A stretch of DNA of 64,000 nucleotides, taken from IMG/VR virus record IMGVR_UViG_3300028840_001395, positions 1 through 64,000 of that record; one strand, 5' to 3'. Positions within the stretch are counted from its first letter, which is position 1, and the number at the start of each line of letters is the position of its first letter. Position numbers and translations under genes: made by a program. This document shows positions 35,830 to 49,887 of the stretch, one piece after another. The notes beneath the pieces are model-generated. The model was given only the letters and a program-made list of their open reading frames with translations, had not been told where the DNA came from and did no database searches.

Positions 35830-36266
35830 TGCCACAGCTCCTCATCAGGAATCTGATCGATGGCGTTGTCCACCTCGTTGCAGTCCTCGGTCACATCCGG
35901 GCTGTCGAGCACCCAGAGCAATGCCGCTATGTCAGGATACTCCGAAGCCACTGGCCCTCGGGCCTTCGAGTTGACAAGATCGTAGAAGGCCCCCTTGATA
36001 CGGGCCTTCTCTTGTCGGGCCTCCCAGAGAGGGCATTCACGGGCATTCTCCGGACACCCCTCTACCCGCATGTCGCAGATGGGACGCCCCTTGACATCAG
36101 GATGGTTGCAGAATCCGACCTGTCGGCTCGGGTCACCCCCCACGGGCACCATCTTGTTGAACTTGCAGGTGTGGGGCTGCTTGCGGAAGTTGTCCTTCAG
36201 GAGCTTCTTCAGGTGCCGGTAGCAGACCTGCTTGAACTTCTGCCGGATGGTGGACTCATCACGCAC
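35826..36266 (-). CDS. Hypothetical Cys-rich protein
   Basis: Several Cys residues; coupled ORF. Confidence 0.65.
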   Translation of the reverse strand: MRDESTIRQKFKQVCYRHLKKLLKDNFRKQPHTCKFNKMVPVGGDPSRQVGFCNHPDVKGRPICDMRVEGCPENARECPLWEARQEKARIKGAFYDLVNSKARGPVASEYPDIAALLWVLDSPDVTEDCNEVDNAIDQIPDEELWQ

Positions 36267-36870
36267 GCATCAACTCCTGCCAACTCCACTTACTCCCCAG
36301 AGCGTCCTGGATGTCAACCGGAAGCTGCTCCCAGCCGATGACCTTGTTGTCGTAGAGATAGACATGGGAAGGCACCTTCAGCAGTCGCTTGACGAACTTG
36401 ATACCCTTCTCGGTCGGCTTCCACAGCCCCGAATCCTTCTTGTCCTGGGATCGGGTCGCGGGAGCCGTGATGGCGAGCCCCCATTTGGTGATGTAGGAAT
36501 AGTCCCGCCCCTCACCCTCCGAACGGATGTCGGTGTACTTCACCCAGTCCTGGGTCTCCCCGAAGCGACGAACTAGCCGGATGAGGAAGCGAGCCATGTT
36601 GGCGTTGAGCTTCCGGCGATAGACCTTGATGTTCTGGCCACAGCACGGACACTCACCCCCATCACCTTCCAGGCACATCGTCACCTGACGAACGGCATCC
36701 TCGTGGGTCAGATCCGACCGAGGGGCGGGGAGGACACCATCCAGGTCACTGTGCGGGTACTCGCTCCGGGGAAAGAGCGCCCCTTCATCCTCATCTTCGT
36801 CGTCGTTGAGGCCCAGAAGGTCATCGATGTCCAGGGGCTCTCGGCCTGCGAAGGGGTCTCTGGTGCTCAT
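36259..36870 (-). CDS. Hypothetical phage protein (CPCCG motif, possible winged helix)
   Basis: ATGA overlap start at 36870; CPCCGQ..KVYRRKL, WGL, GLWKPT.KG. Confidence 0.7.
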   Translation of the reverse strand: MSTRDPFAGREPLDIDDLLGLNDDEDEDEGALFPRSEYPHSDLDGVLPAPRSDLTHEDAVRQVTMCLEGDGGECPCCGQNIKVYRRKLNANMARFLIRLVRRFGETQDWVKYTDIRSEGEGRDYSYITKWGLAITAPATRSQDKKDSGLWKPTEKGIKFVKRLLKVPSHVYLYDNKVIGWEQLPVDIQDALGSKWSWQELMRA

Positions 36871-37502
36871 CGGACAGCCTCGAACCGAGCGGCACCGTTC
36901 TTCTTGACGATGCGGTATGCCTGGTCGGCAGCCTCGACCAGCGCCGGGTTGTGGGTCACCAGCAGGATGTCCAGCCCCAGCCGCTCGCACAGGACGGACA
37001 TGAAACGGCCCATGTTGGCGACGTAGTTGCCGTCGAAAGCCGGAAGAGACTCATCCAGCAGCAGGACAGGTCGGAGTCCACGACGGAGGATGATGATGAC
37101 CCGGAGCAGGATGGACTGAACAGTCGCCACAGCCCCGCCAAAGGCGTCGTTGCTCATGCCTTCGACTTCGGCCCCGCCGGGATGTGTCTGTGAGGTCACC
37201 AGATCCACCGTGACCTTGCCCCGCTGGACATCCACGTTGGCCTTGACCCGAAGATCCTGGTCATCGAACACGGTCTGTAGCCCCTCGGTCTGGAGCTTCT
37301 CGACTGCCTCAACCCCGACCGTGACCTCCTGGTCGATGAGTTGCCGGAGCAGCCCGGCCACGAGGTCGAGCAGTGCCTCTTCGTTCTCCAGGGTGCGGAT
37401 GTCACTCTCGACGGTATTCAGCCGCGAGGCGACTCCATCTCGGAGACCGATGGCCCGGTCGAGCTTCGACCGCAGCTCGGTCGCTGTAGGGAGGGAAGGC
37501 AT
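36867..37502 (-). CDS. SbcC/Rad50-like ABC ATPase, C-terminal half
   Basis: Short coiled coil, signature-like AFGG, Walker B/D-loop LLLDESLPAFD, H-loop LVTH; no Walker A. Confidence 0.8.
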   Translation of the reverse strand: MPSLPTATELRSKLDRAIGLRDGVASRLNTVESDIRTLENEEALLDLVAGLLRQLIDQEVTVGVEAVEKLQTEGLQTVFDDQDLRVKANVDVQRGKVTVDLVTSQTHPGGAEVEGMSNDAFGGAVATVQSILLRVIIILRRGLRPVLLLDESLPAFDGNYVANMGRFMSVLCERLGLDILLVTHNPALVEAADQAYRIVKKNGAARFEAVR

Positions 37503-37506
37503 CCCG

Positions 37507-38673
37507 TCACCGGAGCCACGCCGCAACGGTCAGGTACTCGTCGCCGCCCTTGCCTTCCTCGTCCGCGAACAGGACATCCACGAACCGCAGGTAGCCACCC
37601 TTCTTGCGACGGCTGACGCCGAACTTGATGGTGTCCGACTTCACGAAGTCGAGGATCTTGGTCAGGTTCGGGTAGGCCAGGGTGAAACCCTCATCCGGGA
37701 GAGGGTCAGCGTCGGGCTCGGAGCCCGACTCCACACAGGTCACCTTCTGCTCCGCCGTCCCACCCGTGGCGGTCTGCATCGAGAGGATGACAGGCCGCTC
37801 CGTGTCGTCCGGGTCGCCGGGTCGGGTGAAGCGGAGGCGGTCATCCTCTCGCTGGGCACCCGACTCCAGGAAGGGGATGGCGTTCCGAAGCTCCTCGGTG
37901 TCGAGCACCCACCAGTGCGGATCCTTGTCCGGAGGGCGGTTGAAGACCGGGAAGTTGGCATCGAACCGGCTCTCCTCGAACACGGCCCCGTCCGACCGGC
38001 GGAGGAACAGGCACTTGTCGTGCTCCAGCACTTCCACGTCGTCCTTGATCGTGGCCAGGAAGCTCAGGATGGCCCCCGCATCCTTGGAGTGGACGCGCAT
38101 CGAGGAGTCCTTGAGAGCCGCCACCGACACCAGGGTCGCCGTCCGCTTGTTCGTGCTGGCGAGCACCCCCTCCTTGACCTCGCAGACGCACAGCTCCGGC
38201 TGACGGCTCTCGTCCGCCGACGCGAAGTTGCGGGAGTAGTCGATGGCCCGGTGCAGCCGCTCGGCGGGCATCAGGGCGATGATCTTGGCATCCCCCAGCG
38301 CCTTGTCCCAGAACGGGAACTTGCTCGGGTCGAGCGACTGGAACTTCTGCGTGCCCTTGCCAGGGCAGACCGCCTCGACCACGGCCCCGTCGAACTCGAA
38401 GGTCAGGGCAGCGTCCGGCAGCTTGCTGAGCCACTTCTTGAGCCGCCAGCCCTCGATGGTGAAGGCGTCGAAGTCCGACTCATCCACTGTCGCTGTCACC
38501 GGGCACAGGGCCGAGATGCGGGTCGAGTAGGTCATCACCTGGATCTTCTCGCGGTCGGCGGGATCACGCCGGAACAGGAAGTGAACCGACAGATCGCTGC
38601 CCGTCCCTGCCAGGCATGAGGCCACCACGTCCAGCGCGTTCTCCAAATCCTGCTTCGCCACCTGAATCTTCAT
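37507..38673 (-). CDS. dnaN: DNA polymerase III beta sliding clamp
   Basis: 388 aa; MK..V.K.DL..AL, NFASADESR.PEL, ASTN, ANFP patterns of the beta clamp. Confidence 0.8.
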   Translation of the reverse strand: MKIQVAKQDLENALDVVASCLAGTGSDLSVHFLFRRDPADREKIQVMTYSTRISALCPVTATVDESDFDAFTIEGWRLKKWLSKLPDAALTFEFDGAVVEAVCPGKGTQKFQSLDPSKFPFWDKALGDAKIIALMPAERLHRAIDYSRNFASADESRQPELCVCEVKEGVLASTNKRTATLVSVAALKDSSMRVHSKDAGAILSFLATIKDDVEVLEHDKCLFLRRSDGAVFEESRFDANFPVFNRPPDKDPHWWVLDTEELRNAIPFLESGAQREDDRLRFTRPGDPDDTERPVILSMQTATGGTAEQKVTCVESGSEPDADPLPDEGFTLAYPNLTKILDFVKSDTIKFGVSRRKKGGYLRFVDVLFADEEGKGGDEYLTVAAWLR

Positions 38674-38942
38674 GCTTCCTCCAGAAACGGGCGCACCTCA
38701 CCCTCAGCGGTCTCGATGCGCTGCGTCAAATCCTTCACTTCCTGGTCGAACCTATCTTCGAGCTTCTCGATGGCCCCGTCGAGCTTCTCGGGGGCCACCT
38801 TGCGCTTCTTGCATTCGGCCTCGATGCTCTCCACGTCCTCGCGGGCAGCCGTCAGACGCCCCTTGACGTTGCTCACGCTTTCCTTGGCGTCATCCCGGCG
38901 TCCCAGCAGGGCATCGAGCATCGCACGCTTCTCATCGGCCAT
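38670..38942 (-). CDS. Small coiled-coil protein
   Basis: Heptad pattern across 90 aa; GGAGG RBS. Confidence 0.7.
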   Translation of the reverse strand: MADEKRAMLDALLGRRDDAKESVSNVKGRLTAAREDVESIEAECKKRKVAPEKLDGAIEKLEDRFDQEVKDLTQRIETAEGEVRPFLEEA

Positions 38943-38962
38943 TTCAACCTCCGCAGCTAGTC

Positions 38963-38995
38963 CTACTACCCCTTGTCTCCGGAAGTTGACCCCCC
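38963..38995 (-). promoter_or_regulatory. Putative middle promoter GGGGGTCAA-N16-GTAGTAG
   Basis: Same bipartite motif and spacing as copies at 50708, 52040, 54946. Confidence 0.6.
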
Positions 38996-39973
38996 ATCGA
39001 AACTGAGAAGCTGGAATCCCTCCACACCGTCGAGCATCTCATCGGTGTTCCGGGGCTTGCGGCGATTCTTGGACTTCTGGGCCTGGCGGTCGGGGCAGAC
39101 GCTCTCGTAGTCACAGAACCGGCAGGTCTTCCAGTGGGGCTTGGCGTCGAACTTCTCCTTGTCCATCGCCTTGCGGACATCCACGGCCCGCTGGGCGAGC
39201 CCCTTGACATCCTCCTTGGAACACTCGACCCACTCGATCCCCTCCTCCTTGACCTCGTTGCCCTCGTCGTCCAGCACGGGCTTTCCATCTACATCGAGGA
39301 CCGTCGCGCCGTAGGGGTAACGGTAGTAGCAGAAGCCCAGACGGTCAGGCATCTGCTTGTAGCACAGGTAGAAACAGAGGGCGTACCAGCGCAACTGGTC
39401 GGGGTCGGTGTAGGTCATCAACCCACCCTTGCCGTCCTTGTAACGCCGGGAGTTCTTGCCGTCGATGATGGTGACCCCGGTGTCCTCGCGCTTGACGATG
39501 AGGTCAGCACGACCACCGATGGGCGTGTACTTGTTGGCGTAGGCCACCATGTCCTGCTCGGCCTTCGAGTAGGGGCCGATGAGCCGATGGGCCTTCATGG
39601 TCTTCATGTAGCCCAACACCCCGGCCTTGATGACCTCCAGCATCTCTTCCCTGGGAGGGGCCTGTCGCCAGTCGATGTAGTTCCGGGCCGCTTCGAGCTT
39701 GAAGTTCTGCTCGCACATCTCCAGCAGCCGCTCGATGAGCTGATCCTTGGACAGGAGCTTCCACAGCTCGTCGTTGTAGAACCGCTCGATGACCCACTGG
39801 ATGACGACGCCCATCAGGGCGTGATGCCAGGACTTCTGGAAGGGCTTGGGCTTCTTCCTGCCCGGCCCACCACCGACATCGATGGCTCCCCACCCCTTCG
39901 ACCAGAGGAAATTCTGCGGGCAATCTTCATACTTGGCGAGGCTTGACCAGTAGAGCGTGAATTCCCGTGCCAT
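38966..39973 (-). CDS. PD-(D/E)XK nuclease, AddB/Cas4-like Fe-S type
   Basis: S.L..Y..CP, GRADL...IIDGK, QL..Y, C..C.Y...C. Confidence 0.85.
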   Translation of the reverse strand: MAREFTLYWSSLAKYEDCPQNFLWSKGWGAIDVGGGPGRKKPKPFQKSWHHALMGVVIQWVIERFYNDELWKLLSKDQLIERLLEMCEQNFKLEAARNYIDWRQAPPREEMLEVIKAGVLGYMKTMKAHRLIGPYSKAEQDMVAYANKYTPIGGRADLIVKREDTGVTIIDGKNSRRYKDGKGGLMTYTDPDQLRWYALCFYLCYKQMPDRLGFCYYRYPYGATVLDVDGKPVLDDEGNEVKEEGIEWVECSKEDVKGLAQRAVDVRKAMDKEKFDAKPHWKTCRFCDYESVCPDRQAQKSKNRRKPRNTDEMLDGVEGFQLLSFDGGSTSGDKG

Positions 39974-40026
39974 ACCACTCCTACCCTTTCTCCGAGGTAT
40001 CTTATCCTACCCCGAAGCGGGCGGAG

Positions 40027-41184
40027 TCAAACAGGATTTTCCACGGCCCAGATGAGGTTCTGACACAGCTCGTCCAGCTTGGCGAAGTCAGGTGTCCGGG
40101 GAAGAGAGGACTTCCGCCACACCTCGATGAGATCCTTGTCCTGCTCCTCGGCCCAGGAGTCGAGGTAGTCGAAGGCCCACTCGCCGTTGAGCACGCCCCT
40201 CAGCTTGGGCGCGTCGTGTACCCTCTTGACGATGACGTCACCCGTGGTGCCTATCTCCCGGCACATAGTCATGAGCCGGACAAGGTGCATCCCGTGCTTG
40301 GTGTCGTACCCGAACTTCTTCTCCAAGGCGGCACGGGCCGGGTTCCGGTGCTTCTTCCAGTTCTGGTAGTGCTCCCAGTCCAGCACGGCCTGCCGCCACT
40401 GCTTCTCCCTGGTGAGCATCTCCAGGAAGTTCTCCTCGTAGCCCAGGAGGCGTCCGGCGGCGGCGAACTGCTCGTCGTCCGCGATCTCCAACTCGGTCAG
40501 ACGACGGTACATCTGCTCCTTGACGTAGATCTTCTCGGCGTCGTCCATCTGGCCGAAGTCGATCTCCCAGGAGTCGATCTGCTTCTGGATGCGGCTCATC
40601 GCAGCGTTGAGCTGATCCTTGGAGATGGCCACCATGTCCGAGAGGCCGAACTCCGACCGCAGCGGCCTGTGGGTCGGCGGGTCAAGCAGCCAGCGGCGGT
40701 GCCGCTTGATGCGCTTGATCTGCGACATCGCATAGCCCCGGAAGCTGGCGCTGGCCTTCTTCGAGAGGAAGTCCTGCCGGGCGTTCCGAAGGATCTGGCC
40801 GACGTGGTTGCAAACCACGAGGTCATCGCCGTGGGCGAACAGCACATCGAGGATGTTCGGGTTGCAGGCTGCCGCCATCTGAACGAACTTGATCACGTTG
40901 AAGATGGTGCAATCGATGGGCTGCTTGACCTCCAGTTGGTCGAACTTGTGCAGGAAGCCCATCCGATACTGATGGGGCGGCACGCAGACGCCCTTGTAGT
41001 CGTAGTCCGAGTCGGGCCGATTCGTCCCGTAGGCCCGGCTGCCCGTGACCGCGACCAGAATCAGGCGGTCCTTCTCGCCCATCCACCTCATGTGGGAGCG
41101 GGACTTGTCGCTCAAGAGAGACGCAATGTTGAACAGGGTGTGGAGGTTGCCCTCGGCCTCCGGCCCCTTGACGATTCCATCCAT
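40027..41184 (-). CDS. RlaP-like (Pol-beta superfamily) nucleotidyltransferase
   Basis: GSRAYGTN.PDSD.D.KGV, NPNILD.LF, GYA..Q, GYDTKHGMHLVRL. Confidence 0.85.
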   Translation of the reverse strand: MDGIVKGPEAEGNLHTLFNIASLLSDKSRSHMRWMGEKDRLILVAVTGSRAYGTNRPDSDYDYKGVCVPPHQYRMGFLHKFDQLEVKQPIDCTIFNVIKFVQMAAACNPNILDVLFAHGDDLVVCNHVGQILRNARQDFLSKKASASFRGYAMSQIKRIKRHRRWLLDPPTHRPLRSEFGLSDMVAISKDQLNAAMSRIQKQIDSWEIDFGQMDDAEKIYVKEQMYRRLTELEIADDEQFAAAGRLLGYEENFLEMLTREKQWRQAVLDWEHYQNWKKHRNPARAALEKKFGYDTKHGMHLVRLMTMCREIGTTGDVIVKRVHDAPKLRGVLNGEWAFDYLDSWAEEQDKDLIEVWRKSSLPRTPDFAKLDELCQNLIWAVENPV

Positions 41185-41531
41185 CAGATCACCTCGTAAT
41201 CCTCCAGGGCCATCGGCCCTTCGAGCTTGAACGTGCCCTTCTGCTTCCCGTTGGGATCCCACCCCTGCGTCAGGGCGGAGAGAATGAGCTTCTTCGCGTC
41301 CTTGGGCGTCACCGCCGCCTTCAGATCCTCGTCGGGCATCTCCGGCCCACGGTCATGCACCATGAGCTTAGCCTGCAAGGTCGCCCCGTGATCCTTGATG
41401 TCCTCGTGGGCCAGGAACCAGACCACATCGGGAGCCGCTCCTGGAAGGGTCTTGTGGTGGTTCCCCAGCGCCCAGCGGAAAGCTCTGTCCTCGATCTCGA
41501 TGCGCCTCGACTTCTTTCTCGGTAGTGTCAT
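41184..41531 (-). CDS. Hypothetical protein
   Basis: SRRI.I....FRW; VTP.....LI..AL..GWDP. Confidence 0.7.
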   Translation of the reverse strand: MTLPRKKSRRIEIEDRAFRWALGNHHKTLPGAAPDVVWFLAHEDIKDHGATLQAKLMVHDRGPEMPDEDLKAAVTPKDAKKLILSALTQGWDPNGKQKGTFKLEGPMALEDYEVI

Positions 41532-41544
41532 GCGTCACCTCTTG

Positions 41545-41578
41545 CCTAGACTACTCTCTCGAAAGGTCTGATGAGCTA
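41545..41578 (-). promoter_or_regulatory. Island repeat/promoter copy 1
   Basis: cctagactactctctcgaaaggtctgatgagcta. Confidence 0.7.
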
Positions 41579-42127
41579 CTGTTTCCCCAGGTACTCCGGC
41601 GGAACATGATCGGTGAGCCAGACCCCATTGTCGCTCACGAAGAACTCGAAACCATCCCTGAACATCCGCCCAGCCTGAACCTTGAACATGATGGGGCGGC
41701 CCCCGCGTCGCAGACCCACCGTATGGGCGGTCTGTGGGTCCGGGGAGAGATGGACGTGGTGGCGCTCCATCTTCTTCAATCCCTCCCGCTCAATGGCCTC
41801 CCTCACCTTCGGGTAGCTCCCGTGGTAGAGATACTCGGGCGGCTCGGAGGGCTGGTATCCCAGGTTGACCTTGACGGAGTGGCCCTGGCTGGCCCGGATA
41901 CGCTTGCCATCCTCGGACATGGCGAACCGCTTCTTGTTGTTCTCGGCCACCGCTTGCAGGATGAGTTGCCGGGTCATCCAGTTCGGAGACTTCTCGACCA
42001 GCGTGTTGAAGTCCGTCCAGCCCTGGTCATCGAGGGTGATGCCGATCTTCTCGGGCTTGTGTCGGAGCACCAGGCTCATGAACTTGCTGGCCCTGACGAC
42101 CGGGTTCTGGCTTCTCTTGCCAGCCAT
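41576..42127 (-). CDS. kptA: RNA 2'-phosphotransferase (Tpt1/KptA)
   Basis: SKFMSLVLRH, KKRF, IRASQGHS, LYHGS, RHHVHLS, NGVWL. Confidence 0.95.
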   Translation of the reverse strand: MAGKRSQNPVVRASKFMSLVLRHKPEKIGITLDDQGWTDFNTLVEKSPNWMTRQLILQAVAENNKKRFAMSEDGKRIRASQGHSVKVNLGYQPSEPPEYLYHGSYPKVREAIEREGLKKMERHHVHLSPDPQTAHTVGLRRGGRPIMFKVQAGRMFRDGFEFFVSDNGVWLTDHVPPEYLGKQ

Positions 42128-42159
42128 CTTTCTATCTCCCGTGGGTGGCTGCCAGCACA

Positions 42160-42420
42160 TCAGGATTCGTGGAACTCGTGGCACTTCCCGCAGTACTTGT
42201 GGCGAACATCGTTGGGGTTGTAGGAAGTCATCCCGCACTTGAGGCACTTGATGGCCATATCCCCATGAGCACCCTCGACCGGGATGATCTTGTAGGTCTT
42301 GCGGGTCTTCTCCGCCGGGGGCTCGGCCTTGGGAGGAGGAGCCGCCCTCCGCGTCGGCAGCGGCGCTCTCCGGCCACTCCTGCTACGTCTGCCGCCTCTG
42401 CAACAACCCATCAGTGCCAC
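42160..42420 (-). CDS. Small zinc-ribbon protein
   Basis: IKCLKCG.TSYNPND....YCGKCH. Confidence 0.65.
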   Translation of the reverse strand: MALMGCCRGGRRSRSGRRAPLPTRRAAPPPKAEPPAEKTRKTYKIIPVEGAHGDMAIKCLKCGMTSYNPNDVRHKYCGKCHEFHES

Positions 42421-42755
42421 GTCACATTCTCGGGAATCTCATCGTCATCGTCACCGAAGATGCGATCCCAGCCGTCCCGATACGCCCTGGACGCTACGCG
42501 GGCAGGCCCCTTGTGACCTGTCCCCTCCTGGACCACCTCGACATCGTAGAGCGGACTGCCCTCACGCCTCTTGACGTTGATGATCTCCTTGCCGTCCATC
42601 TCTTCCTCGGTCATCGAGTCGGTGTTCTTGACCCTTCCGACCTCGATAGACCGCTGACCTTCCTCGTTCTGGCGAAGGCGCATGATCTGGGCTTCATCCT
42701 TGTCCTCACCGAGGATGATGGCCTGGTCGATCTTCTTGGCCTTCTTCTCGCTCAC
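42411..42755 (-). CDS. Hypothetical protein
   Basis: GGAGG RBS; AYRDGWDRIFG motif. Confidence 0.7.
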   Translation of the reverse strand: MSEKKAKKIDQAIILGEDKDEAQIMRLRQNEEGQRSIEVGRVKNTDSMTEEEMDGKEIINVKRREGSPLYDVEVVQEGTGHKGPARVASRAYRDGWDRIFGDDDDEIPENVTWH

Positions 42756-42786
42756 GACCTCGCCTCCGTGGAGGATTCTACCACAC

Positions 42787-43026
42787 CTATAGCCCCATGA
42801 CCTTGGATACGAACTTCTTCACGACCTCCACCACCTCGACAGCCGACCGATCTCCCCGGTCATAGGCATCGAAAGCCTCCCTGGAATAGGGGTCAGCCGC
42901 TCGGGCGTAGTCGAGGTAGTCCCGTTTCTTCTCCGCAGAGAGGTTCCCGCCCCAGGCTCGGACGAATGGCCCGAGATACCACTCACGGTGAGGACGGTCA
43001 CCTGGCCTGCACTCTCCCTCTGCCAT
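42787..43026 (-). CDS. Hypothetical protein
   Basis: ATG immediately after PNK stop. Confidence 0.5.
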   Translation of the reverse strand: MAEGECRPGDRPHREWYLGPFVRAWGGNLSAEKKRDYLDYARAADPYSREAFDAYDRGDRSAVEVVEVVKKFVSKVMGL

Positions 43027-43027
43027 G

Positions 43028-43999
43028 TCAGGCTCCGAAGAACTCGTGCGCCCAGGCGAACTGGAATCCACACCGCTCCGCGAAGGTCTTGTCCTTGGTC
43101 ATGTCGCCCACGAAAATGGTCTGGCTCGGGTCGAGCTTGTATTTCTCGATGAACCACACGCCCATGCCGGGGCACGGCTTCGGCCAGTACGACTGCGGGA
43201 CGCCGCCCCGCTCGGTCGAGTAGATGTAGTCGATGTCCACGCCCAGGAGCCGGTTGGTCTCATCGAACGCCTCGATGGCCCCCTGCTCGGGCACGTACTT
43301 CTTGTCACCCGGCTTCTTGGCGATGCCAGACTGGTTGCTGGCCCCACACAGGATGAAGCCCTCGCGCTGCTTGGCCTGGAGCAGATCCCGGCGACCATCC
43401 ATGATCTGCACCTCGACGGCGCAGGTCGGAGAGGGGTTGTCCGGGTTACTCGACGTGCGGAGGGTGCCGTCGTAGTCGAGGATGATGGCCCGGTTGGTGT
43501 AATCGTCTGGCAGGGTGATCTCGACCGGGACAGTCTCGATGGCCGTGAACCCCTCGGACTGCTCGGGCATCACCAGTCGCTTGAACCAGGCGAACTGGGC
43601 CACGGGCGGGAACATGTTGGGGTCATCCTTGTGAGCCTTGTAGTCCTCCTTGCGGAACAGCTTGCCGTAGCGCCGGATCTGACGCAGAGCGGCGAGGAAC
43701 TGGCACTGTTCCTTGGTGGCGTCCAGCCACACGAGCCGGACGGGGAGCCCCAGCTCCTGACCCACAGCCAGGAGCGTCTCTCGGGCCTCCACGGTGCCGT
43801 AGGTGTTGTCCAGGACGAACAACCGCTTGCCCTGTGCGTGCAGCTCGCGGACTCGCTGGTAGACCTGGCCTCCATCCTTGAGGGAGCCTCCCAGCTCGTC
43901 CCGGTTCACCCGGATGTAGCCCACCTTCTCGAAGCGTGCGGTCTCCCGTGTCTTGCCCGAAGCCATCGGGCCACCCACGGCCACAATTTCACCGCTCAT
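43028..43999 (-). CDS. Polynucleotide kinase / HAD phosphatase (PNKP-like)
   Basis: P-loop GPMASGKT, RVNRDELG, LDNT; HAD DYDGT, SNQSGI, KP.PGM, FVGD..D. Confidence 0.88.
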   Translation of the reverse strand: MSGEIVAVGGPMASGKTRETARFEKVGYIRVNRDELGGSLKDGGQVYQRVRELHAQGKRLFVLDNTYGTVEARETLLAVGQELGLPVRLVWLDATKEQCQFLAALRQIRRYGKLFRKEDYKAHKDDPNMFPPVAQFAWFKRLVMPEQSEGFTAIETVPVEITLPDDYTNRAIILDYDGTLRTSSNPDNPSPTCAVEVQIMDGRRDLLQAKQREGFILCGASNQSGIAKKPGDKKYVPEQGAIEAFDETNRLLGVDIDYIYSTERGGVPQSYWPKPCPGMGVWFIEKYKLDPSQTIFVGDMTKDKTFAERCGFQFAWAHEFFGA

Positions 44000-44012
44000 G
44001 CGATACCTCCTA

Positions 44013-44047
44013 CCTAGACTACTCTCTCGGAGAGCGAGATAAGCCTA
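44013..44047 (-). promoter_or_regulatory. Island repeat/promoter copy 2
   Basis: cctagactactctctcggagagcgagataagccta. Confidence 0.7.
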
Positions 44048-44821
44048 GTCCAGCAAGTCCATGATGTCGGTAGGTTCAAAATCATGGAGGGGTCTGTCCC
44101 CAGCAGCTTCCAGACGTTTCCGAGCCACATCGCAGTAGCCAGGCTCCTTCTCAATCAGGACATATCCCCGTCCCATCTGCTGGGCCACGACCCCCACAGT
44201 GCCGCTTCCGGCGAAGGGGTCGAGAACCACATCCTCGGGGTCTGTGTACACTTCAAGAACCCGCTGGACAAGAGACTCGGGGAAGGCTGCGGGGTGTTCC
44301 ACCGCCATGTGCTTCTCACCGACCGTGCTCCACACGGCCCGCTGGCTCAACTGGCGGTTCCTGATCTTCTGCTCCTTGGGCGCACCCTCGATCTTGCGGA
44401 AGGTGTAGAGGTGCTCGAACTCGGGGACAGGGCGAGGGGCAGAGATGGCGTGCTTGCCCCCGGTGATCTTGGAGAAGTCCTTGTGCCAGACCCGCTGGGC
44501 CTGGAGGACAAGTCCGTTGGCGAGGCCCTGCGACCAGTAGATCCAGCCCATCGGCATCTCGCACGGGGCCTCTGTCCCCAGAATCTCTCGGGCCGGGATG
44601 ATGTCTCCGAAGTTGAACACGGCGTAGCCACCACGCTTGAGGACGCGCCGACACTCCCTGAAGGTCTCGTTGAGCAGTTGCAGCAGGACGCCGATTCGGA
44701 TGTCCGGCTCGTAGTCCTTTCCAACCGCATAGGGCGGTGACGTGAACACGAGAGCCACTGATTCGGAGGGGATCTTGGGCAGCACGTCTTCACTACGACC
44801 ACAGATCAGAGTGTTCTTCAC
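44045..44821 (-). CDS. Orphan beta-class N4-cytosine/N6-adenine DNA methyltransferase
   Basis: N-terminal TSPPY, HPAAFP, C-terminal DPFAGSGT; GTG start 44821 with AGGAG. Confidence 0.9.
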   Translation of the reverse strand: MKNTLICGRSEDVLPKIPSESVALVFTSPPYAVGKDYEPDIRIGVLLQLLNETFRECRRVLKRGGYAVFNFGDIIPAREILGTEAPCEMPMGWIYWSQGLANGLVLQAQRVWHKDFSKITGGKHAISAPRPVPEFEHLYTFRKIEGAPKEQKIRNRQLSQRAVWSTVGEKHMAVEHPAAFPESLVQRVLEVYTDPEDVVLDPFAGSGTVGVVAQQMGRGYVLIEKEPGYCDVARKRLEAAGDRPLHDFEPTDIMDLLD

Positions 44822-45309
44822 GGGATCGGAACTCCTACGGACAAGAGCCAGGACAGGTCGAGAGTCCACTCATGGACGCTGCGCTCGTTCCAGATCCGGG
44901 CCGCATCGCGGACATGCTCCCGCGCCTGGCGCTCCGTCCAGCCGTTGACCTCCATCATGTGAGCGATGGCCTCGTCCGCGAACCCCTGGGTCTGGGTGAA
45001 CCCGAAGTGCTTGACCCCGTGGCAGGCCGGACAGAGCGCGATGAGCCGGACGAGTTTCTGGACGTGAGTCTTCTCATCGTAGTCCCAGATCTCGTGACAC
45101 TCGACTGGATGCTTCGGCCCCTTCCCACCACAGATCTCGCAGTGGTATCCGGCTGCCGCGTAGGTCATCTTGCGGAGCTTGTCCCAGTCCTTCCTCGGGA
45201 GGTCAGAGCGCAGGTTCTTCCCCCACGCCGTCGAGGGAACCAGTTCGACAGTCAGAGTCTCGGTCGGAGACGTGTCGTTGAGGTCGAACTCCTGAAAGCC
45301 GTCAGCCAT
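44818..45309 (-). CDS. HNH-like nuclease
   Basis: CEICG..ECHE.W...LCPACH.VKH. Confidence 0.8.
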   Translation of the reverse strand: MADGFQEFDLNDTSPTETLTVELVPSTAWGKNLRSDLPRKDWDKLRKMTYAAAGYHCEICGGKGPKHPVECHEIWDYDEKTHVQKLVRLIALCPACHGVKHFGFTQTQGFADEAIAHMMEVNGWTERQAREHVRDAARIWNERSVHEWTLDLSWLLSVGVPIP

Positions 45310-45823
45310 CTCCAAACCTCTCCCGAAGGCGCTTCCGGACGGCGGGGGGCACCATCCGATCCACCACCTCGCGCCAGCCGTTCGGGCCGATGAGTCCCTT
45401 GACCAGACTGGACGACACCTCGCAGTATTCACGGGGCGGAATGAGATACACGCTCTCGACTTCGGGGTCGATGTCCTCGTTGACGTGCCTCATCATCTTC
45501 TCGAAGGCCAGATCCTCGGCTGACCGGACACCCCGAACCAGATGCGTAGCCCCTACCTTGGATGCGTAGCGGACGAGGTAGTCGCCTCCGAATCCGGCAA
45601 CCTCGACCTTCTTGCCCTCGGGCCAGATGATGACCTTCTCCAGCAGCATGTCCACAGTCTCTTGGAGCATGTCCATGCGCTCCTCCAGACTGAACATCGG
45701 TGTCTTGTCCGGGTTGACCCCGACCGCGATCACCAGATCATCGAAGAGGGTGATCGCCTGTTGCATGACCCAGACGTGGCCCACGGTGGGAGGGTCGAAA
45801 CTGCCTGCGTAGATGGCTTTCAT
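45302..45823 (-). CDS. coaD: Pantetheine-phosphate adenylyltransferase
   Basis: AIYAGSFDPPTVGH, NPDK..MFSLEER, VRGVR...D..FE, VSSSLVK. Confidence 0.92.
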   Translation of the reverse strand: MKAIYAGSFDPPTVGHVWVMQQAITLFDDLVIAVGVNPDKTPMFSLEERMDMLQETVDMLLEKVIIWPEGKKVEVAGFGGDYLVRYASKVGATHLVRGVRSAEDLAFEKMMRHVNEDIDPEVESVYLIPPREYCEVSSSLVKGLIGPNGWREVVDRMVPPAVRKRLRERFGDG

Positions 45824-45834
45824 GAGACCTCCGC

Positions 45835-45869
45835 CCTAGACTACTCTGCCGAGATCGGGGATAAGCCTA
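45835..45869 (-). promoter_or_regulatory. Island repeat/promoter copy 3
   Basis: cctagactactctgccgagatcggggataagccta. Confidence 0.7.
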
Positions 45870-46886
45870 TGCCCCCGCCTTCTCCAGGTAGAGGATAGCC
45901 CGCTCTCGCACCTCGTCCTCGATCCCGTCCATCCCCTCAATGGTCTCCCGAAGTGACACGTCATCCTGTCGGGTGAGCACATCTCGGAGCCCCTCCACGA
46001 AGGTCTCGATGTTCATCTGTCGAGCCTCAGCCCGGACGCGACCCTCGATGTCGAATACCTCCTTGGCAGGCTGCACCCGCAAGGGCTTCTCCTCGATGCT
46101 GAAGACCTCCTTGCCTGGGCCGAAACGGAGGATCGCACAGGATGGCGTCCGTTTCAGGTCATCCTCGACCAGCGCCCCGCGAGCCAGGCTGCCGATGTTG
46201 ACCACCCACTTACCGTGGGCGATCTCGGTGACCCCCTGGTTCTTGTGCCAGTGTCCGAAGCACCACACGTCCGGGTCGAGGTTGGCCAGGTCAGAGTAAT
46301 TCAGCACATCCTCGGCCCCGAAGAATTCGCCCCCCTCCTCGCTGGCCAGACAGTGAGCCACCACGACCAGATGATCCTCGTCGCCCTTGGTGATAGCGTT
46401 GAAGCGGTTCACGTCATACTGGGTGCCGTGATAGGGAATGCCCACCACCCGGACGCGGAGCTTGGGCTTGGTCGTCCCGTCCACCTTCACCGCGTCCGGC
46501 CAGATCGTGAAACGGGCCTCGTGCTCATCGAACAAAGGCACGAACGTCCGGGTCTTGAACAGCACCCCCAGAGGGCTCTCTTCCAGGTATTCCAGGCTCC
46601 CGTACTTCACGTCATGGTTGCCCACGGTAGCATGGACTGTCACGCTCTGGTGGACTTCTGCGACCCGCTGGATGAGCTTGTGGCTGTTCCTGACCGGGCT
46701 CTTGATGTGAAAGAGGTCGCCGCCGTCGAGAATGGCCTCGGCATTCTCGTCCAGGGCGATCTCCACCGTCTGGGACAGCTTGTCCAGAATCGTAGCGGCC
46801 CAGTCGTCTGTCCGCGACTGGGGTGGTTGGTCAGCCAGGTGGGCATCGGAGCGCCAGATCAGGGTGATGGTGTCGTCAGTGCTCAT
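45867..46886 (-). CDS. sbcD: SbcD/Mre11-like metallophosphoesterase nuclease
   Basis: SDAH, GGDLFH, GNHD, AH, GHWH, NIGSL. Confidence 0.88.
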   Translation of the reverse strand: MSTDDTITLIWRSDAHLADQPPQSRTDDWAATILDKLSQTVEIALDENAEAILDGGDLFHIKSPVRNSHKLIQRVAEVHQSVTVHATVGNHDVKYGSLEYLEESPLGVLFKTRTFVPLFDEHEARFTIWPDAVKVDGTTKPKLRVRVVGIPYHGTQYDVNRFNAITKGDEDHLVVVAHCLASEEGGEFFGAEDVLNYSDLANLDPDVWCFGHWHKNQGVTEIAHGKWVVNIGSLARGALVEDDLKRTPSCAILRFGPGKEVFSIEEKPLRVQPAKEVFDIEGRVRAEARQMNIETFVEGLRDVLTRQDDVSLRETIEGMDGIEDEVRERAILYLEKAGA

Positions 46887-47964
46887 GGTCATCCCCCAGC
46901 ACCGAACCGCAGACCGGGCATTCCCCAAGCTCCTCCAGAAGCTCGGCCACAGCCTTCTCGGCACTATCCAGACTTGCCTGTTCCGCAACCAGCTTCTCTT
47001 CCAGGGTGGCAACCCTCTTGGTGGCCGCAGCGTGCCGGGCCTTGAGGTCTTGCAGCACACCCAGGGCGTCGAGGAACCGGGTTGCCGGGGTGAAGTCGAT
47101 GTCCACCTCGATGTTCTCGACCCCAGCGAGGGACTCGACCCGCTCCACCGCGTCTGTGTAGCGGGTCTGCAACTCCCGCAGGTCGTCGGATTCATCGAGG
47201 ATGGCCTGGAGAGAGTCGAAGTCCTGGTCACCCGGCACTTCGACATCCTCGATGCCTTCCAGGGCTTCCACCGCCGCTGTGGCGGAGTTCTTCCTGTCCC
47301 GCAGGTCAGAGAGCCCGAGAATGGCCTTTTCGACCACAGCGGCCTTCTGAAGCCCCTGCTCGATGCTCTGGACTTCACCCTCCAGGTCGTCCAGGCCGTC
47401 GAACCGCCCAAGCTCCTCTTGGAGCGTCTGCCTGTCAGACATCCGCACCTTGAGTGTCGAACCAGCCGAACGCCGGTCAGACTCGGACAGCTTGAGCGCC
47501 TGATTGAGCTGAGTCACCCGCTCCACGTCGGCCACAGCCTCGGCCAGCACACTTCCGGGCTGGTCGAGCAGGAAGATCTGGCCGGTGAACTGGGGGGCGA
47601 ACTGGGGCCAGATCTCCCGACCCCCGGCCTGGATGGGTCGGATGCCCAGGTCACGCACCTCGTCGGGAACATGCTGACCCGGATGGATGGGCGACCCATC
47701 GTTGATCACGTAGGTCGGCTTGGCCTTCTTCGCCTTGCCCTTCGACCATTCCAGCTTGCCGTCCGGGAACTGGACTTCGACGGTGGCCTTGGGCTTCTTG
47801 TGCCGGACGAACCCGGTGCCACGGGTGTTCTGGAAGGCTCCCCGAATGGCCCGCATCAGGGCGGACTTGCCCGAGTTGTTCGGGCCGGTGATGACTGTGA
47901 AGCCATTCACCTCGATGGACGCATCTGCGATGCTTTGGAAGTTCTGGACGCGGACCTTGAACAT
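46876..47964 (-). CDS. sbcC: SbcC/Rad50-like ATPase, N-terminal half ending at zinc hook
   Basis: VQNFQS, GPNNSGKS, Q-loop, coiled coil, terminal CPVCG. Confidence 0.85.
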   Translation of the reverse strand: MFKVRVQNFQSIADASIEVNGFTVITGPNNSGKSALMRAIRGAFQNTRGTGFVRHKKPKATVEVQFPDGKLEWSKGKAKKAKPTYVINDGSPIHPGQHVPDEVRDLGIRPIQAGGREIWPQFAPQFTGQIFLLDQPGSVLAEAVADVERVTQLNQALKLSESDRRSAGSTLKVRMSDRQTLQEELGRFDGLDDLEGEVQSIEQGLQKAAVVEKAILGLSDLRDRKNSATAAVEALEGIEDVEVPGDQDFDSLQAILDESDDLRELQTRYTDAVERVESLAGVENIEVDIDFTPATRFLDALGVLQDLKARHAAATKRVATLEEKLVAEQASLDSAEKAVAELLEELGECPVCGSVLGDDHEH

Positions 47965-47987
47965 CGGTCACCCGCCTTTCAGAGCTA

Positions 47988-49241
47988 CTACTCCTCGACG
48001 GTCTCTTCCGAGTCCCCCTTGGAGGACTGGTTGCCCGTGAGGATGGCGTCGATGTCCGCGAAGTCGTCCTCCTCCGGCTGCGGGATGTTCTCGACCTTCC
48101 CGGAGGACATCGCCACCATGACGGCCTTGTACAGCTCAGGCCACGCCCCCTCAACCTGGGCGATCTCCTCCTTGAACTTGGACATGCCCTGACCACGGAT
48201 CTCGGTGCCGTCCTTGCGCTCCCAGGTGAGCCACGCGCCGCCCTTCTTCACGACCCCGTGGGACGAGGCCGTCTCGATGACGGAGCGGATGTCGTCAATC
48301 CCCTCCCCGAACCGGATGTAGAGATCATCTTCGAGGCCCTGGCTGCCCGCGACCTTGCACTTGTCGATCTTGAGCCGAACCACCGCGCCAGAAGCGGCAT
48401 CGACCTTCTGGTGCTTGCGGGGATCGTAGGCCTTCTCCTTCAAGGACTTGACCCGCTTGAGCCGCAGACGCAGGGCGGAGTAGAACTTCCAGGCGTTGCC
48501 GCCCGCTGTGGTGGTCTTGTCCCCGTAGCCCGACATGTTGATCTTGTCCCGAAGCTGGCTGACACCGATCACGCAGGAGCCAGTCCGGGTGATCACGGTC
48601 TGAAGCTGCGGGAGGAACTGCGACCAGATCCGGGCGACGTTGCCCAATCCACCACCGCCACCGCCCGTGTCGCCCTTGTCGTCAAGCTCCTGGGACATCA
48701 CGGCCTCGGGAATACCGGCGCTCACCGAGTCCACGATGATGAGGGTGACCCCGGCCTTGGCCATCGCCCACAGAACCTTGATGCCCTTCTCCAGGCTGTC
48801 GGGCTGGACGAGCATGAACTTCTTGGGATCCTGCACCGGGACACCGATGGTCGTCGCGTAGGCCAGGTCGATGGCGTGCTCCCAGTCGATGAAGCACACG
48901 GTGCCGCCCTTGGCGATGGTCGTGGCGGAGGCGGTCAGGGCCAGGGTGGTCTTGCCTGCCGACTCCATGCCGTAGAGATTGACGATGCGACCACGGGGGA
49001 GGCCGGGACACGGCATCACACCGAAGCGATTGGTGCGACCCCCGATGAGGAAGTCGGCCACGATAGACCCCGTGGGGAGGTGAGGGATGGACTTCTTGAG
49101 CCGCCCCTCGTTGACCTCCACGAAGGAGTCATCCTTGAGCACACTCGACACGATCTTCTTGCCCGCCAGCAGCGGGTTCGGAGACCCCTGCTTCTCATCC
49201 TTGTCCTTCTTGGTGGACTTCTTCGCCTTCGCCTTCGCCAT
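47988..49241 (-). CDS. recA: RecA recombinase
   Basis: TGS...D, GLPRGRIV..YG.ESAGKTT, FID.EHA, IVDSV, QLR.KI, GG.A.KFY, GAW. Confidence 0.95.
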   Translation of the reverse strand: MAKAKAKKSTKKDKDEKQGSPNPLLAGKKIVSSVLKDDSFVEVNEGRLKKSIPHLPTGSIVADFLIGGRTNRFGVMPCPGLPRGRIVNLYGMESAGKTTLALTASATTIAKGGTVCFIDWEHAIDLAYATTIGVPVQDPKKFMLVQPDSLEKGIKVLWAMAKAGVTLIIVDSVSAGIPEAVMSQELDDKGDTGGGGGGLGNVARIWSQFLPQLQTVITRTGSCVIGVSQLRDKINMSGYGDKTTTAGGNAWKFYSALRLRLKRVKSLKEKAYDPRKHQKVDAASGAVVRLKIDKCKVAGSQGLEDDLYIRFGEGIDDIRSVIETASSHGVVKKGGAWLTWERKDGTEIRGQGMSKFKEEIAQVEGAWPELYKAVMVAMSSGKVENIPQPEEDDFADIDAILTGNQSSKGDSEETVEE

Positions 49242-49887
49242 CGTCTTCCTCCTGCGACCATAGGAAAAATCGTTCATCCTCCCGGTAGAGGATACCTTTC
49301 AAAGCTGTCTCGCCAGCCCGCTTGCCCCGAGAGTACTTGTGGATCTCGGTGAACTGCTTCTTCTCCAAGGGTGTCAGGTCACTGACCCCTATTACCCCAT
49401 CATGGAGCAACCAGAACCTAGCTGCCGACCTGGCGACCCAGTAGGCGTCTGCCTCGTTGTGGTTCCAGCGGCCCTTGCCGCCCGTGTCGGCCTTGGCAGC
49501 CTCCACCATGTCGGGCTTGTTCATCTTCCAGCCCTTCGGTCGCTCAAGGAACCGATGGGCGTGGGCCTTGATCTGGCCGGGCGAGAAGAACACCACGTCC
49601 ACCTTCTCCATCCGGAGAGCCTCACAGGTGAACAGGAAGAGACCATACATGCCCTCTGACCAGAGATCGTTGAACACGGGATACTCGACCCCGAGCTTCT
49701 TCACGTCGAGTGACTGGACGAGGGCTTGGACGTGAGATCGCATCTCGACGTAGCGGTCAACGAAGAGGGTCTTGGCCGAAGTCTGGAATCGACCGCGCTC
49801 AAGACAACGGCCAGGCCCTGCACCATCGGTATCGTGCAGAGCCCAGCCGAAGTTCGTCAATGAGGGGTCAAATCCGAGGACGCGCAT
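49195..49887 (-). CDS. RuvC-like Holliday junction resolvase
   Basis: VLGFDPSLTNFG, GVE, P..IK, NEADA. Confidence 0.8.
   Translation of the reverse strand: MRVLGFDPSLTNFGWALHDTDGAGPGRCLERGRFQTSAKTLFVDRYVEMRSHVQALVQSLDVKKLGVEYPVFNDLWSEGMYGLFLFTCEALRMEKVDVVFFSPGQIKAHAHRFLERPKGWKMNKPDMVEAAKADTGGKGRWNHNEADAYWVARSAARFWLLHDGVIGVSDLTPLEKKQFTEIHKYSRGKRAGETALKGILYREDERFFLWSQEEDDGEGEGEEVHQEGQG

What the first reader, a model, noticed from the sequence alone, without database searches (positions are those of the whole stretch)
36867..47964. SbcC/Rad50 split at the zinc hook into genes ~9 kb apart
Seen: the N-half (46876-47964: Walker A, coiled coil) ends at CPVCG. The C-half (36867-37502: signature, Walker B, H-loop) has only a short coil. 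A 90-aa pure coiled-coil gene (38670-38942) lies between them. Known: Rad50 is normally one chain folding back at the hook. Inference: a two- or three-piece Rad50 assembled in trans.
Basis: partly seen in the sequence, partly recalled or inferred. Interest (0 to 1): 0.6.

Follow-up and report, generated by a model that had tools for sequence, protein, structure and literature searches.

The report
Rad50/SbcC encoded in three pieces
A huge phage (436 kb) encodes its Rad50/SbcC DNA-end-processing ATPase as separate genes, a front half ending at the zinc hook, a back half and probably a small helical third piece; the same split recurs in over a thousand phage protein clusters and I found no paper describing it.

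Summary
The window is the first 64 kb of a complete 435.8 kb phage genome.

- **N piece** (46876-47964, minus strand, 362 aa): Rad50-type N-lobe, a helical arm, and an end at ECPVCG plus 8 residues.
- **C piece** (36867-37502, 211 aa): a 60-residue coil plus the C-lobe, with an FGG signature-like motif, Walker B LLLDE and H-loop LVTHN.

The genome has no other Rad50-like gene. A complex prediction puts N and C together as a Rad50 head with an antiparallel coil (score 0.79, best control 0.00).

The split is not a local accident:
- All 175 N-piece relatives examined end 8-26 residues after a CxxC.
- An exhaustive search finds 1063 clusters of the C piece at E<=1e-10. The best 150 are all stand-alone and none is Rad50-sized; almost all are about 200-230 aa.
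- The split recurs in Tunturiibacter phage Tunturi_5 (halves 108 kb apart), Bacillus phages 0305phi8-36 and vB_BboS-125, and a Microbacterium phage.

The 90-aa gene (38670-38942) is a conserved family. Its homologues lie between the N and C genes in the Bacillus phages, so a three-piece enzyme is plausible, but I could not test its binding.

The 9 kb distance reflects interleaved genes and lineage-specific cargo inside a compact operon. Verdict: a new variant of a known kind.

The parts
46876..47964 (-). N piece of the split Rad50/SbcC: N-lobe (residues 1-135, Walker A at 27-34, invariant Q125/Q129), helical arm (helices 137-186, 192-235, 246-278, 292-346) and a terminal CPVCG hook motif (349-353) followed by an 8-residue tail
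45867..46892 (-). SbcD/Mre11-type nuclease. Its ATG (46892 or 46886) overlaps the last codons of the N piece, which suggests translational coupling
   Evidence: Metallophos 1e-10; weak Mre11/SbcD NCBIfam hits; junction read
38670..38942 (-). S piece: a 90-aa helix-loop-helix protein with a conserved loop ...EC(K/R)xKxxDPxxLD and a terminal L-x-P-F. It is the candidate third subunit
   Evidence: Present in 60 of 62 related loci just upstream of clamp and C. Its profile hits vB_BboS-125 gp34 and 0305phi8-36 ORF007, which lie between the N and C genes. Predicted as a hairpin in the ESM Atlas
37507..38673 (-). Sliding clamp (DNA polymerase processivity factor) interleaved between S and C. Its start overlaps the S stop, and its stop lies 4 nt before the C start
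   Evidence: phrog_947 4e-14; junctions read; the order S-clamp-C is conserved
36867..37502 (-). C piece of the split Rad50/SbcC: coil (residues 7-67) plus C-lobe with FGG (121-123), Walker B LLLDE (147-151), D-loop and H-loop LVTHN (181-185)
38966..39973 (-). Cas4-like PD-(D/E)XK exonuclease, a conserved member of the same operon (between SbcD and S in the relatives)
   Evidence: PDDEXK_1 2e-18; synteny
39974..45866 (-). Lineage-specific cargo between SbcD and the Cas4-like gene. It accounts for most of the 9 kb distance and is absent from compact relatives
47988..49887 (-). RecA/UvsX-like recombinase (47988-49277) and RuvC-like resolvase (49195-49887) directly upstream of the N piece. They give the recombination context
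   Evidence: RecA 2e-45; synteny in relatives and in Tunturi_5

Best explanation
This is a naturally fragmented Rad50/SbcC.

Proposed assembly:
- The N piece supplies the Walker A lobe, the ascending arm and the CxxC hook.
- The C piece supplies a 60-residue descending coil and the signature/Walker B/H-loop lobe.
- The two assemble non-covalently into one ATPase head.
- The C coil pairs antiparallel with the first ~65 residues of the N arm.
- Two such heads presumably dimerise around ATP and work with the SbcD nuclease, whose gene overlaps the end of the N gene. The role would be processing DNA ends and hairpins for recombination-dependent replication, as gp46/gp47 do in T4.
- The 90-aa helix-loop-helix protein S is probably a third subunit that packs against the distal ~140 residues of the N arm, which otherwise have no partner. 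The CxxC at the free C-terminus probably still joins two arms through zinc.

Shown here: the motif complement, the predicted N-C interface, co-occurrence, and conservation of the split and of S.

Inferred: S binding, zinc binding, dimerisation, and nuclease and ATPase activity.
For: 1. Complementary halves of one fold.
- The N profile hits Rad50 N segments and the Rad50 hook structures 1l8d and 6zff.
- The C profile hits P. furiosus Rad50 C segments best, at 3.5e-5.
- Foldseek's best match to the N model is 1f2u_A.
- In the NCBIfam Rad50 model PRK03918, N residues 150-361 align with profile positions 247-450 of 878, so the match runs up to the profile's midpoint.

2. Complex prediction.
- Score 0.79; best of 3 controls 0.00.
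- The mark was reached by 58 of 80 solved complexes and by 2 of 110 mismatched pairs. These counts hold only roughly because my own alignments were used.
- The three runs agree in at least 93% of contacts, and the partner's pLDDT is at least 80.
- The interface is the Rad50 head sheet (C 178-182 with N 21-25; C 146-150 with N 120-123) plus an antiparallel coil (C 7-67 with N 140-205).

3. One N piece, one C piece and no other Rad50-like gene in the complete genome.

4. Conservation.
- 62 IMG/VR loci carry C; 60 also have S, and 55 have an N piece ending in CxxC 3.4-9.5 kb upstream on the same strand.
- The C profile finds 2916 clusters at E<=1e-3 and 1063 at E<=1e-10. The best 150 are all stand-alone; apart from fragments and a few of 265-324 aa they are about 200-230 aa.
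- The split also occurs in LR745208, Tunturi_5 (opposite strands, 108 kb apart), vB_BboS-125, phBC6A51, PHBA67-T, 0305phi8-36 and Magritte.

5. The gene order N-S-C is colinear in the Bacillus phages, and the S profile hits their small genes at 3.8e-9 and 1.2e-8.

6. The N and SbcD genes overlap.

7. Two relatives carry an intein in the Walker A of the N piece. By general knowledge of inteins, not tested here, this is typical of a functional active site.
Against: - No experiment of any kind supports the model.
- The complex score may partly reflect the model's memory of solved Rad50 N+C segment structures, so it shows likeness rather than binding.
- The signature motif is FGG (RGGG in the Bacillus phages), not SGG.
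- S stays at about 78-97 aa while N arms range from ~200 to ~330 residues, so S cannot simply complete the coil.
- Tunturi gp180 matches the S profile only weakly (E 0.12).
- Magritte's N piece lacks the CxxC.
Confidence: 0.78

Rival explanations
1. The enzyme has only two pieces. S is an unrelated neighbour, for example a replication or clamp accessory protein, and the distal N arms pair with each other as a parallel homodimeric coil stapled by zinc.
For: - S does not scale in length with the N arm.
- In the huge phages S is coupled to the clamp gene.
- S has no detectable relative in the PDB.
- S alone is predicted as a self-contained hairpin.
Against: - The S family is found next to the split pair in phages that share little else.
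- In two Bacillus phages it lies exactly between N and C, with no clamp nearby.
- It is present in 60 of 62 loci.
Confidence: 0.3
2. The C piece belongs to a different ABC-type system, for example one working with the adjacent clamp. The N piece acts without it.
For: - C is translationally coupled to the clamp.
- Pfam finds no domain in C.
- NCBIfam's best matches for C are transporter ATPases, all weak.
Against: - N has no signature, Walker B or H-loop lobe of its own, and C has no Walker A.
- The predicted head and coil interface scores 0.79 against 0.00 for controls.
- In the Bacillus phages C sits beside N and S with no clamp.
- The C profile's best PDB hits are Rad50 C segments.
Confidence: 0.04
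3. The pieces are remnants of a Rad50 gene broken by cargo insertion, or they are rejoined into one chain by RNA or protein splicing, frameshifting or another genetic code.
For: About 6 kb of lineage-specific cargo lies within the interval.
Against: - Both pieces are intact and conserved in length and motifs across hundreds of clusters.
- Functional genes lie between them.
- In Tunturi_5 the pieces are on opposite strands, 108 kb apart.
- No Rfam intron family matches 36000-48500.
- The 8-residue tail of N and the coil start of C leave no room for split-intein halves (sequence).
Confidence: 0.01
4. The module is a Lamassu-like (LmuB) or other SMC-type conflict system rather than a recombination nuclease.
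For: In PADLOC the N piece matches LmuB over residues 18-358 (1e-12) and matches many defence ATPases over the P-loop.
Against: - The N gene overlaps an SbcD/Mre11-type phosphoesterase gene.
- The module sits in a conserved RuvC-RecA-N-SbcD-Cas4-S-clamp-C operon.
- No LmuA or LmuC-like partner was seen.
- It is a core gene set of a large phage clade.
Confidence: 0.04

Closest known systems
Rad50/SbcC with Mre11/SbcD (T4 gp46/gp47, E. coli SbcCD, P. furiosus Mre11-Rad50)
   Same: - The ABC head is built from an N-lobe and a C-lobe.
- An antiparallel coil emerges from the head.
- The CPxCG hook motif is followed by ...H, much like the archaeal and bacterial hooks (the comparison with those hook sequences is from my own knowledge).
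- A phosphoesterase nuclease gene lies adjacent.
- The genes sit in a recombination context.
   Different: - The chain ends about 10 residues after the CxxC.
- The C-lobe is a separate 211-aa protein with only ~60 residues of coil.
- The signature is FGG, not SGG.
- The N arm consists of 4 or more helical segments of ~45 aa separated by G-x-x-x-V-x-V-P-like linkers, and the number of segments varies.
- A conserved 90-aa hairpin protein accompanies the pair.
Engineered two-chain Rad50 catalytic domains (PDB 1F2T/1F2U, 1II8, 3QKR; N and C segments as separate chains)
   Same: They show that the N and C segments of Rad50 assemble into an active head without a covalent link (from knowledge of these entries). 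The chains listed are separate A and B segments, and they are the best sequence matches to the two pieces here.
   Different: Those are laboratory truncations lacking the arm and hook. Here the division is natural, and the N piece keeps the whole ascending arm and the hook.
Mre11-Rad50 fusion of Bacillus phage 0305phi8-36 (Yoshida et al. 2011, PMC3175470)
   Same: ORF008 is a member of this family: SbcD fused to the N piece, ending at CPTCN plus a tail.
   Different: The paper reported that one P-loop NTPase segment 'was not observed'. Here the missing segment is identified as ORF005, with ORF007 as the small piece.
Other phage genes in pieces (T4 topoisomerase genes 39 and 60; split DNA polymerase genes), cited from my own knowledge
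   Same: An enzyme that is elsewhere one chain is encoded by separate genes whose products assemble in trans.
   Different: This case concerns an SMC-type protein, whose single-chain fold-back has been regarded as a defining trait. The pieces can be interleaved with other genes or lie 108 kb apart.

Membership tests
Rad50/SbcC (SMC-like ABC ATPases of the Mre11 complex) | N-lobe with Walker A and Q-loop | tested here: met
   GPNNSGKS; invariant Q125/Q129; Pfam AAA_23 above its cut-off; closest folds are Rad50, SMC and RecF heads, with Rad50 1f2u_A first in Foldseek
Rad50/SbcC (SMC-like ABC ATPases of the Mre11 complex) | C-lobe with signature motif, Walker B, D-loop and H-loop | tested here: inconclusive
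   Walker B LLLDE, D-loop DESLPAFD and H-loop LVTHN are invariant or nearly so. The signature is F/Y-G-G (R-G-G-G in the Bacillus phages) rather than S-G-G. The profile's best PDB hits are Rad50 C segments at 3.5e-5. The lobe lies on a separate polypeptide.
Rad50/SbcC (SMC-like ABC ATPases of the Mre11 complex) | One chain that folds back on itself, with a long intramolecular antiparallel coiled coil between the lobes | tested here: not met
   The two lobes are separate genes 9374 bases apart, as in all relatives examined. The antiparallel coil is predicted between chains and covers only N 140-205 and C 7-67. The distal N arm shows no confident fold-back.
Rad50/SbcC (SMC-like ABC ATPases of the Mre11 complex) | CxxC zinc hook at the arm apex | tested here: inconclusive
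   C349, P350 and C352 are invariant, and 175 of 175 relatives carry the motif. Matches to Pfam Rad50_zn_hook (0.002, below cut-off) and to the hook structures 1l8d and 6zff are weak. Apex position and zinc binding cannot be tested here.
Rad50/SbcC (SMC-like ABC ATPases of the Mre11 complex) | Partner Mre11/SbcD phosphoesterase | tested here: met
   A Metallophos protein (1e-10) whose start overlaps the end of the N gene. It is adjacent or nearby in relatives and fused to N in 0305phi8-36.
Rad50/SbcC (SMC-like ABC ATPases of the Mre11 complex) | ATP-dependent head dimerisation, DNA binding and stimulation of the nuclease | not testable with these tools
   Needs biochemistry.
Lamassu LmuB | SMC-like ATPase encoded with LmuA effector and LmuC partner in a defence locus | tested here: not met
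   PADLOC gives an LmuB hit of 1e-12 for N only. The neighbours are SbcD, RecA, RuvC, a Cas4-like nuclease and the clamp.

The most novel reading that the evidence does not exclude
A widespread phage lineage builds a working Rad50 from three polypeptides.
- The ascending arm ends in a zinc hook at a free C-terminus.
- A separate hairpin protein (S) packs on the distal arm.
- A separate C-lobe carries only the head-proximal coil.

The arm would then not be a closed intramolecular coiled coil. It could open, or exchange subunits, in ways a one-chain SMC-type protein cannot. This would be a natural test of what chain continuity and the hook contribute to Mre11-Rad50 function.
Probability: 0.45. 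Interest if true: 0.75.

Novelty: new variant of a known kind. Interest (0 to 1): 0.62.

Why it matters
- **Mechanism.** Rad50 and the SMC proteins are textbook examples of one chain folding back on itself. The role of the coiled coil and the hook in passing signals between the apex and the head is still debated. A natural enzyme in which the ascending strand plus hook, a middle piece and the descending strand plus C-lobe are separate proteins offers a ready-made system. The pieces could be mixed, omitted or swapped to ask what continuity is for.
- **Annotation.** Thousands of phage genes are now labelled 'exonuclease', 'ATPase', 'chromosome segregation ATPase' or 'hypothetical'. The missing half of the 0305phi8-36 Mre11-Rad50 fusion, reported as not observed in 2011, is identified here.
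- **Genome evolution.** The three parts of one enzyme can be interleaved with a nuclease and the sliding clamp, or moved 108 kb apart, without being lost.

Tried and rejected
- **Other Rad50-like gene in the genome.** Searches with PF13558, PF02463 and PF13476 found only the N piece, the clamp loader (weak) and a complete 293-aa small ABC ATPase at 87920-88801, which has both lobes and is unrelated.
- **RNA splicing.** No Rfam family matches 36000-48500.
- **Split intein at the junction.** Rejected from the sequence, because the termini are too short.
- **Unsplit close relatives.** The exhaustive C-profile search lists only stand-alone proteins among its best 150. Two of them (P0361, 299 aa; P0380, 313 aa) have ~90-aa coiled N-terminal extensions that could be S-C fusions, but the S profile does not match them. 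Where unsplit relatives begin further down the list could not be seen.
- **Fold-back of the distal N arm onto itself**, which would put the CxxC next to the start of C. AF2 of residues 190-362 alone gives three helices with pTM 0.37, and structural matches are only to single ~57-residue helices. There is therefore no support, and this is weak evidence against it.
- **S against the PDB by profile.** Only coiled-coil noise.
- **Scaling of S length with N-arm length.** None found.
- **Literature.** Six of the seven full-text searches targeted a description of the split; none found one. The seventh, on Tunturiibacter phage, returned no paper.
Full report
**What the window is.** The window is bases 1-64000 of a complete 435,804-base virus record with direct terminal repeats. 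It is therefore a 'huge phage'. GC content is about 62% and nearly all genes in the region lie on the minus strand.

The N piece (46876-47964, 362 aa):
- It has Walker A GPNNSGKS and Pfam AAA_23, AAA_15 and SMC_N matches.
- It has a weak Rad50_zn_hook match at residues 336-360.
- It ends ...GECPVCGSVLGDDHEH.

The C piece:
- Read from the ATG at 37502 it is 211 aa, the length of its homologues.
- Invariant or nearly invariant positions include F121-G122-G123, L149-D150-E151, L153-P154-A155-F156-D157 and H184-N185. These correspond to a degenerate signature, Walker B, D-loop and H-loop.
- Pfam finds no domain, but PHROG 15167 ('ATPase', 211 positions) matches end to end. The N piece matches PHROG 16465 ('exonuclease').

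Gene junctions, read directly from the sequence:
- The SbcD-like gene starts at ATG 46892 (or 46886), inside the last codons of the N gene.
- The 90-aa gene has a GGAGG site, and its stop overlaps the clamp gene's ATG.
- The clamp stop lies 4 nt before the C start.

**Are the two halves parts of one Rad50-type ATPase?**
- A profile of 39 C-piece homologues hits the C-terminal segments of P. furiosus Rad50 best (3.5e-5; transporter ATPases follow).
- A profile of 47 N-piece homologues hits Rad50 N segments. With its last 60 positions it also hits the Rad50 zinc-hook structures 6zff and 1l8d.
- The AF2 model of N has pLDDT 81.8 and helices at 137-186, 192-235, 246-278 and 292-346. Its closest fold is the Rad50 N segment 1f2u_A, followed by SMC, RecN and RecF heads.
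- The NCBIfam archaeal Rad50 model PRK03918 aligns N residues 150-361 with profile positions 247-450 of 878. The match therefore runs up to the profile's midpoint.

The complex prediction for N+C gave a score of 0.79 against 0.00 for the best of three controls:
- The mark was reached by 58 of 80 solved complexes and by 2 of 110 mismatched pairs. These counts hold only roughly, because my own alignments were used.
- The three runs agree in at least 93% of contacts, and the partner's pLDDT is at least 80.
- The interface is that of a Rad50 head. C strand 178-182 lies beside N strand 21-25, and C 146-150 beside N 120-123.
- It also includes an antiparallel coil, C 7-67 with N 140-205.
- Two-chain Rad50 heads have been solved, so the pass may partly come from the model's memory. 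It shows likeness, not binding.

The complete genome holds one N piece, one C piece and no other Rad50-like gene. The only other hit is a self-contained 293-aa ABC ATPase outside the window.

**Is the split conserved?** Yes, and very widely.
- The word-based search found 666 clusters of the C piece; the 120 listed are almost all about 200-225 aa. It found 469 clusters of the N piece; the 120 listed are 353-459 aa. Both occur on contigs of up to 536 kb.
- All 120 listed N pieces end 8-26 residues after a CxxC, most often ECPVCGS.
- The exhaustive profile search with C found 2916 clusters (50% identity) at E<=1e-3 and 1063 at E<=1e-10. The best 150 are all stand-alone; none approaches the length of a one-chain Rad50.
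- In 62 IMG/VR loci around a C piece, 60 have the small gene and 55 have an N piece ending in CxxC on the same strand. Of the other seven, three are cut by a contig end and four have the N piece beyond the 10 kb fetched.

Among cultured or named phages:
- LR745208 has N (455 aa) ending CPVCG and C about 6.3 kb downstream of the N stop.
- Tunturiibacter phage Tunturi_5 has gp181 (485 aa, ending CGKCG) and gp14 (221 aa) on opposite strands, 108 kb apart.
- Bacillus phage vB_BboS-125 has gp32 and gp35.
- phBC6A51 and PHBA67-T carry matches to both halves.
- Bacillus phage 0305phi8-36 has ORF008 and ORF005.
- Microbacterium phage Magritte has gp155 and gp2. Here the N piece has lost the CxxC.
- Every phage with a long match to the N piece (38-89% of the query) also has a C piece.

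**The operon and the '9 kb'.** Across the huge-phage relatives the gene order is RuvC, RecA/UvsX, N, SbcD, Cas4-like nuclease, S, clamp, C. In the most compact loci these genes are contiguous (for example L048 and L055). The distance from the N stop to the C start ranges from 3.4 kb, which is just those four intervening genes, to 9.5 kb. At 9.4 kb the window is near the top of the range. The reason is about 6 kb of cargo between SbcD and the Cas4-like gene.

**The small piece (S).**
- S is a family of about 85-100 aa proteins. Conserved features are K-R-R-D, G-R-L, a loop ...EC(R/K)xKxxDPxxLD and a terminal L-x-P-F.
- On its own it is predicted as a helical hairpin.
- A profile built only from the huge-phage members was searched against all 322 ORFs of the distant phage loci. 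It picked vB_BboS-125 gp34 (3.8e-9) and 0305phi8-36 ORF007 (1.2e-8), with the next hit at 0.016.
- Those two genes lie between the N and C genes: N, AP2-domain gene, S, C in vB_BboS-125, and SbcD::N, S, gp6, C in 0305phi8-36.
- In Tunturi_5 a 97-aa helix-loop-helix gene (gp180) directly follows the N gene, but it matches the profile only weakly (0.12).
- The order N-S-C is what fission of one ancestral gene would leave. Its survival in phages that share little else argues that S belongs to the enzyme. This is inference; I could not test binding.

**What remains open: the arm.**
- C pairs with only the first ~65 residues of the N arm.
- The remaining ~140 residues in the window (up to ~240-270 in relatives) form helical segments of about 45 aa. 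They are separated by G-x-x-x-V-x-V-P-like linkers, and their number varies. N lengths cluster at ~350-370 and ~396-416 aa, with a few at 427-461.
- S has two helices of about 40 residues and does not lengthen with the arm. It therefore cannot be a simple descending strand for the whole arm.
- AF2 of the distal arm alone gives three helices without confident mutual packing (pTM 0.37). Structural matches are only to single helices. A fold-back that would bring the CxxC down to the start of C is thus not supported.
- The likeliest arrangements are that S bundles with the hook-proximal helices, that two N arms pair in parallel, or both, with the two CxxC motifs sharing a zinc ion. These are hypotheses.
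- In 72 of the 120 N pieces the tail after the CxxC holds two or more His or Cys residues. They might add zinc ligands.

**Rivals.**
- Remnants of a broken gene, or rejoining by splicing, are excluded by the conservation of both pieces, the intervening functional genes, the Tunturi_5 arrangement, the absence of intron families and the lack of room for split-intein halves.
- A different partner system for C is unlikely. N and C each lack what the other has, and the Bacillus phages have no clamp at the locus.
- A Lamassu-like reading (PADLOC LmuB 1e-12) does not fit the SbcD, RecA and RuvC context.

**Comparison with what is known.**
- It works like Rad50/SbcC with Mre11/SbcD. It meets the tests for the head motifs and the nuclease partner.
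- It fails the family's one-chain fold-back architecture, and its signature motif is atypical.
- Laboratory two-chain Rad50 heads show that such assembly is feasible (my knowledge of PDB 1F2T and related entries, whose separate A and B chains appear).
- Yoshida et al. [quoted passage not shown] That segment is ORF005.
- The jumbo-phage survey PMC7824862 treats SbcC and SbcD as practically universally conserved but, in the passages read, does not mention a split.
- No searched paper describes the split. Closed-access literature was not searched.

**Verdict.** This is a natural, ancient and widespread fragmentation of Rad50/SbcC into two certain pieces and one probable third. It is a new variant of a known kind. 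Confidence is 0.78 for the trans-assembled enzyme and about 0.5 for S as a subunit.

Noticed in passing
window 39974-45866 (-): The cargo block between SbcD and the Cas4-like nuclease looks like an RNA-repair and modification set. It holds an RlaP/pol-beta-type nucleotidyltransferase (40027-41262), a Tpt1/KptA RNA 2'-phosphotransferase (41576-42247), a polynucleotide kinase plus 3'-phosphatase (43028-43999), an N6/N4 DNA methylase (44045-44869) and a cytidylyltransferase-like protein (45302-45823). Compact relatives lack the block.
   Followed up: partly
L034:3397-5643 and L035:2644-4764: Two relatives carry an intein (Hint plus LAGLIDADG) inserted at the Walker A of the N piece, which makes those ORFs 748 and 706 aa long.
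   Followed up: partly
N pieces of relatives: N-piece lengths are bimodal, at ~350-370 and ~396-416 aa, with a few at 427-461 aa. The steps of about 45 aa correspond to one arm repeat (a helix plus a G-x-x-x-V-x-V-P-like linker).
   Followed up: partly
L006:3978-6287 (Bacillus phage 0305phi8-36 ORF008); L007:3992-5044 (Microbacterium phage Magritte gp155): In 0305phi8-36 the SbcD nuclease is fused to the N piece. In Magritte the N piece has no CxxC, and the C piece (gene 2) lies at the other end of the genome.
   Followed up: partly
G000:C1:87920-88801 (outside the window; L071:1405-2286): A complete small ABC ATPase of 293 aa with a lysine-rich tail. It has Walker A, Walker B and an H-loop in one chain and is unrelated to the split pair.
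   Followed up: no
P0361 (299 aa) and P0380 (313 aa): These C-piece relatives from an AT-rich lineage have a ~90-100 aa coiled N-terminal extension. They may be natural S-C fusions, but the S profile does not detect the extension.
   Followed up: partly
window 36259-36990 (-) and 35826-36266 (-): Directly downstream of the C piece lies a gene matching PHROG 2693 (unknown function, 1e-30), whose long-ORF call overlaps the end of the C gene. It is followed by a Cys-rich 146-aa ORF with no family match.
   Followed up: no
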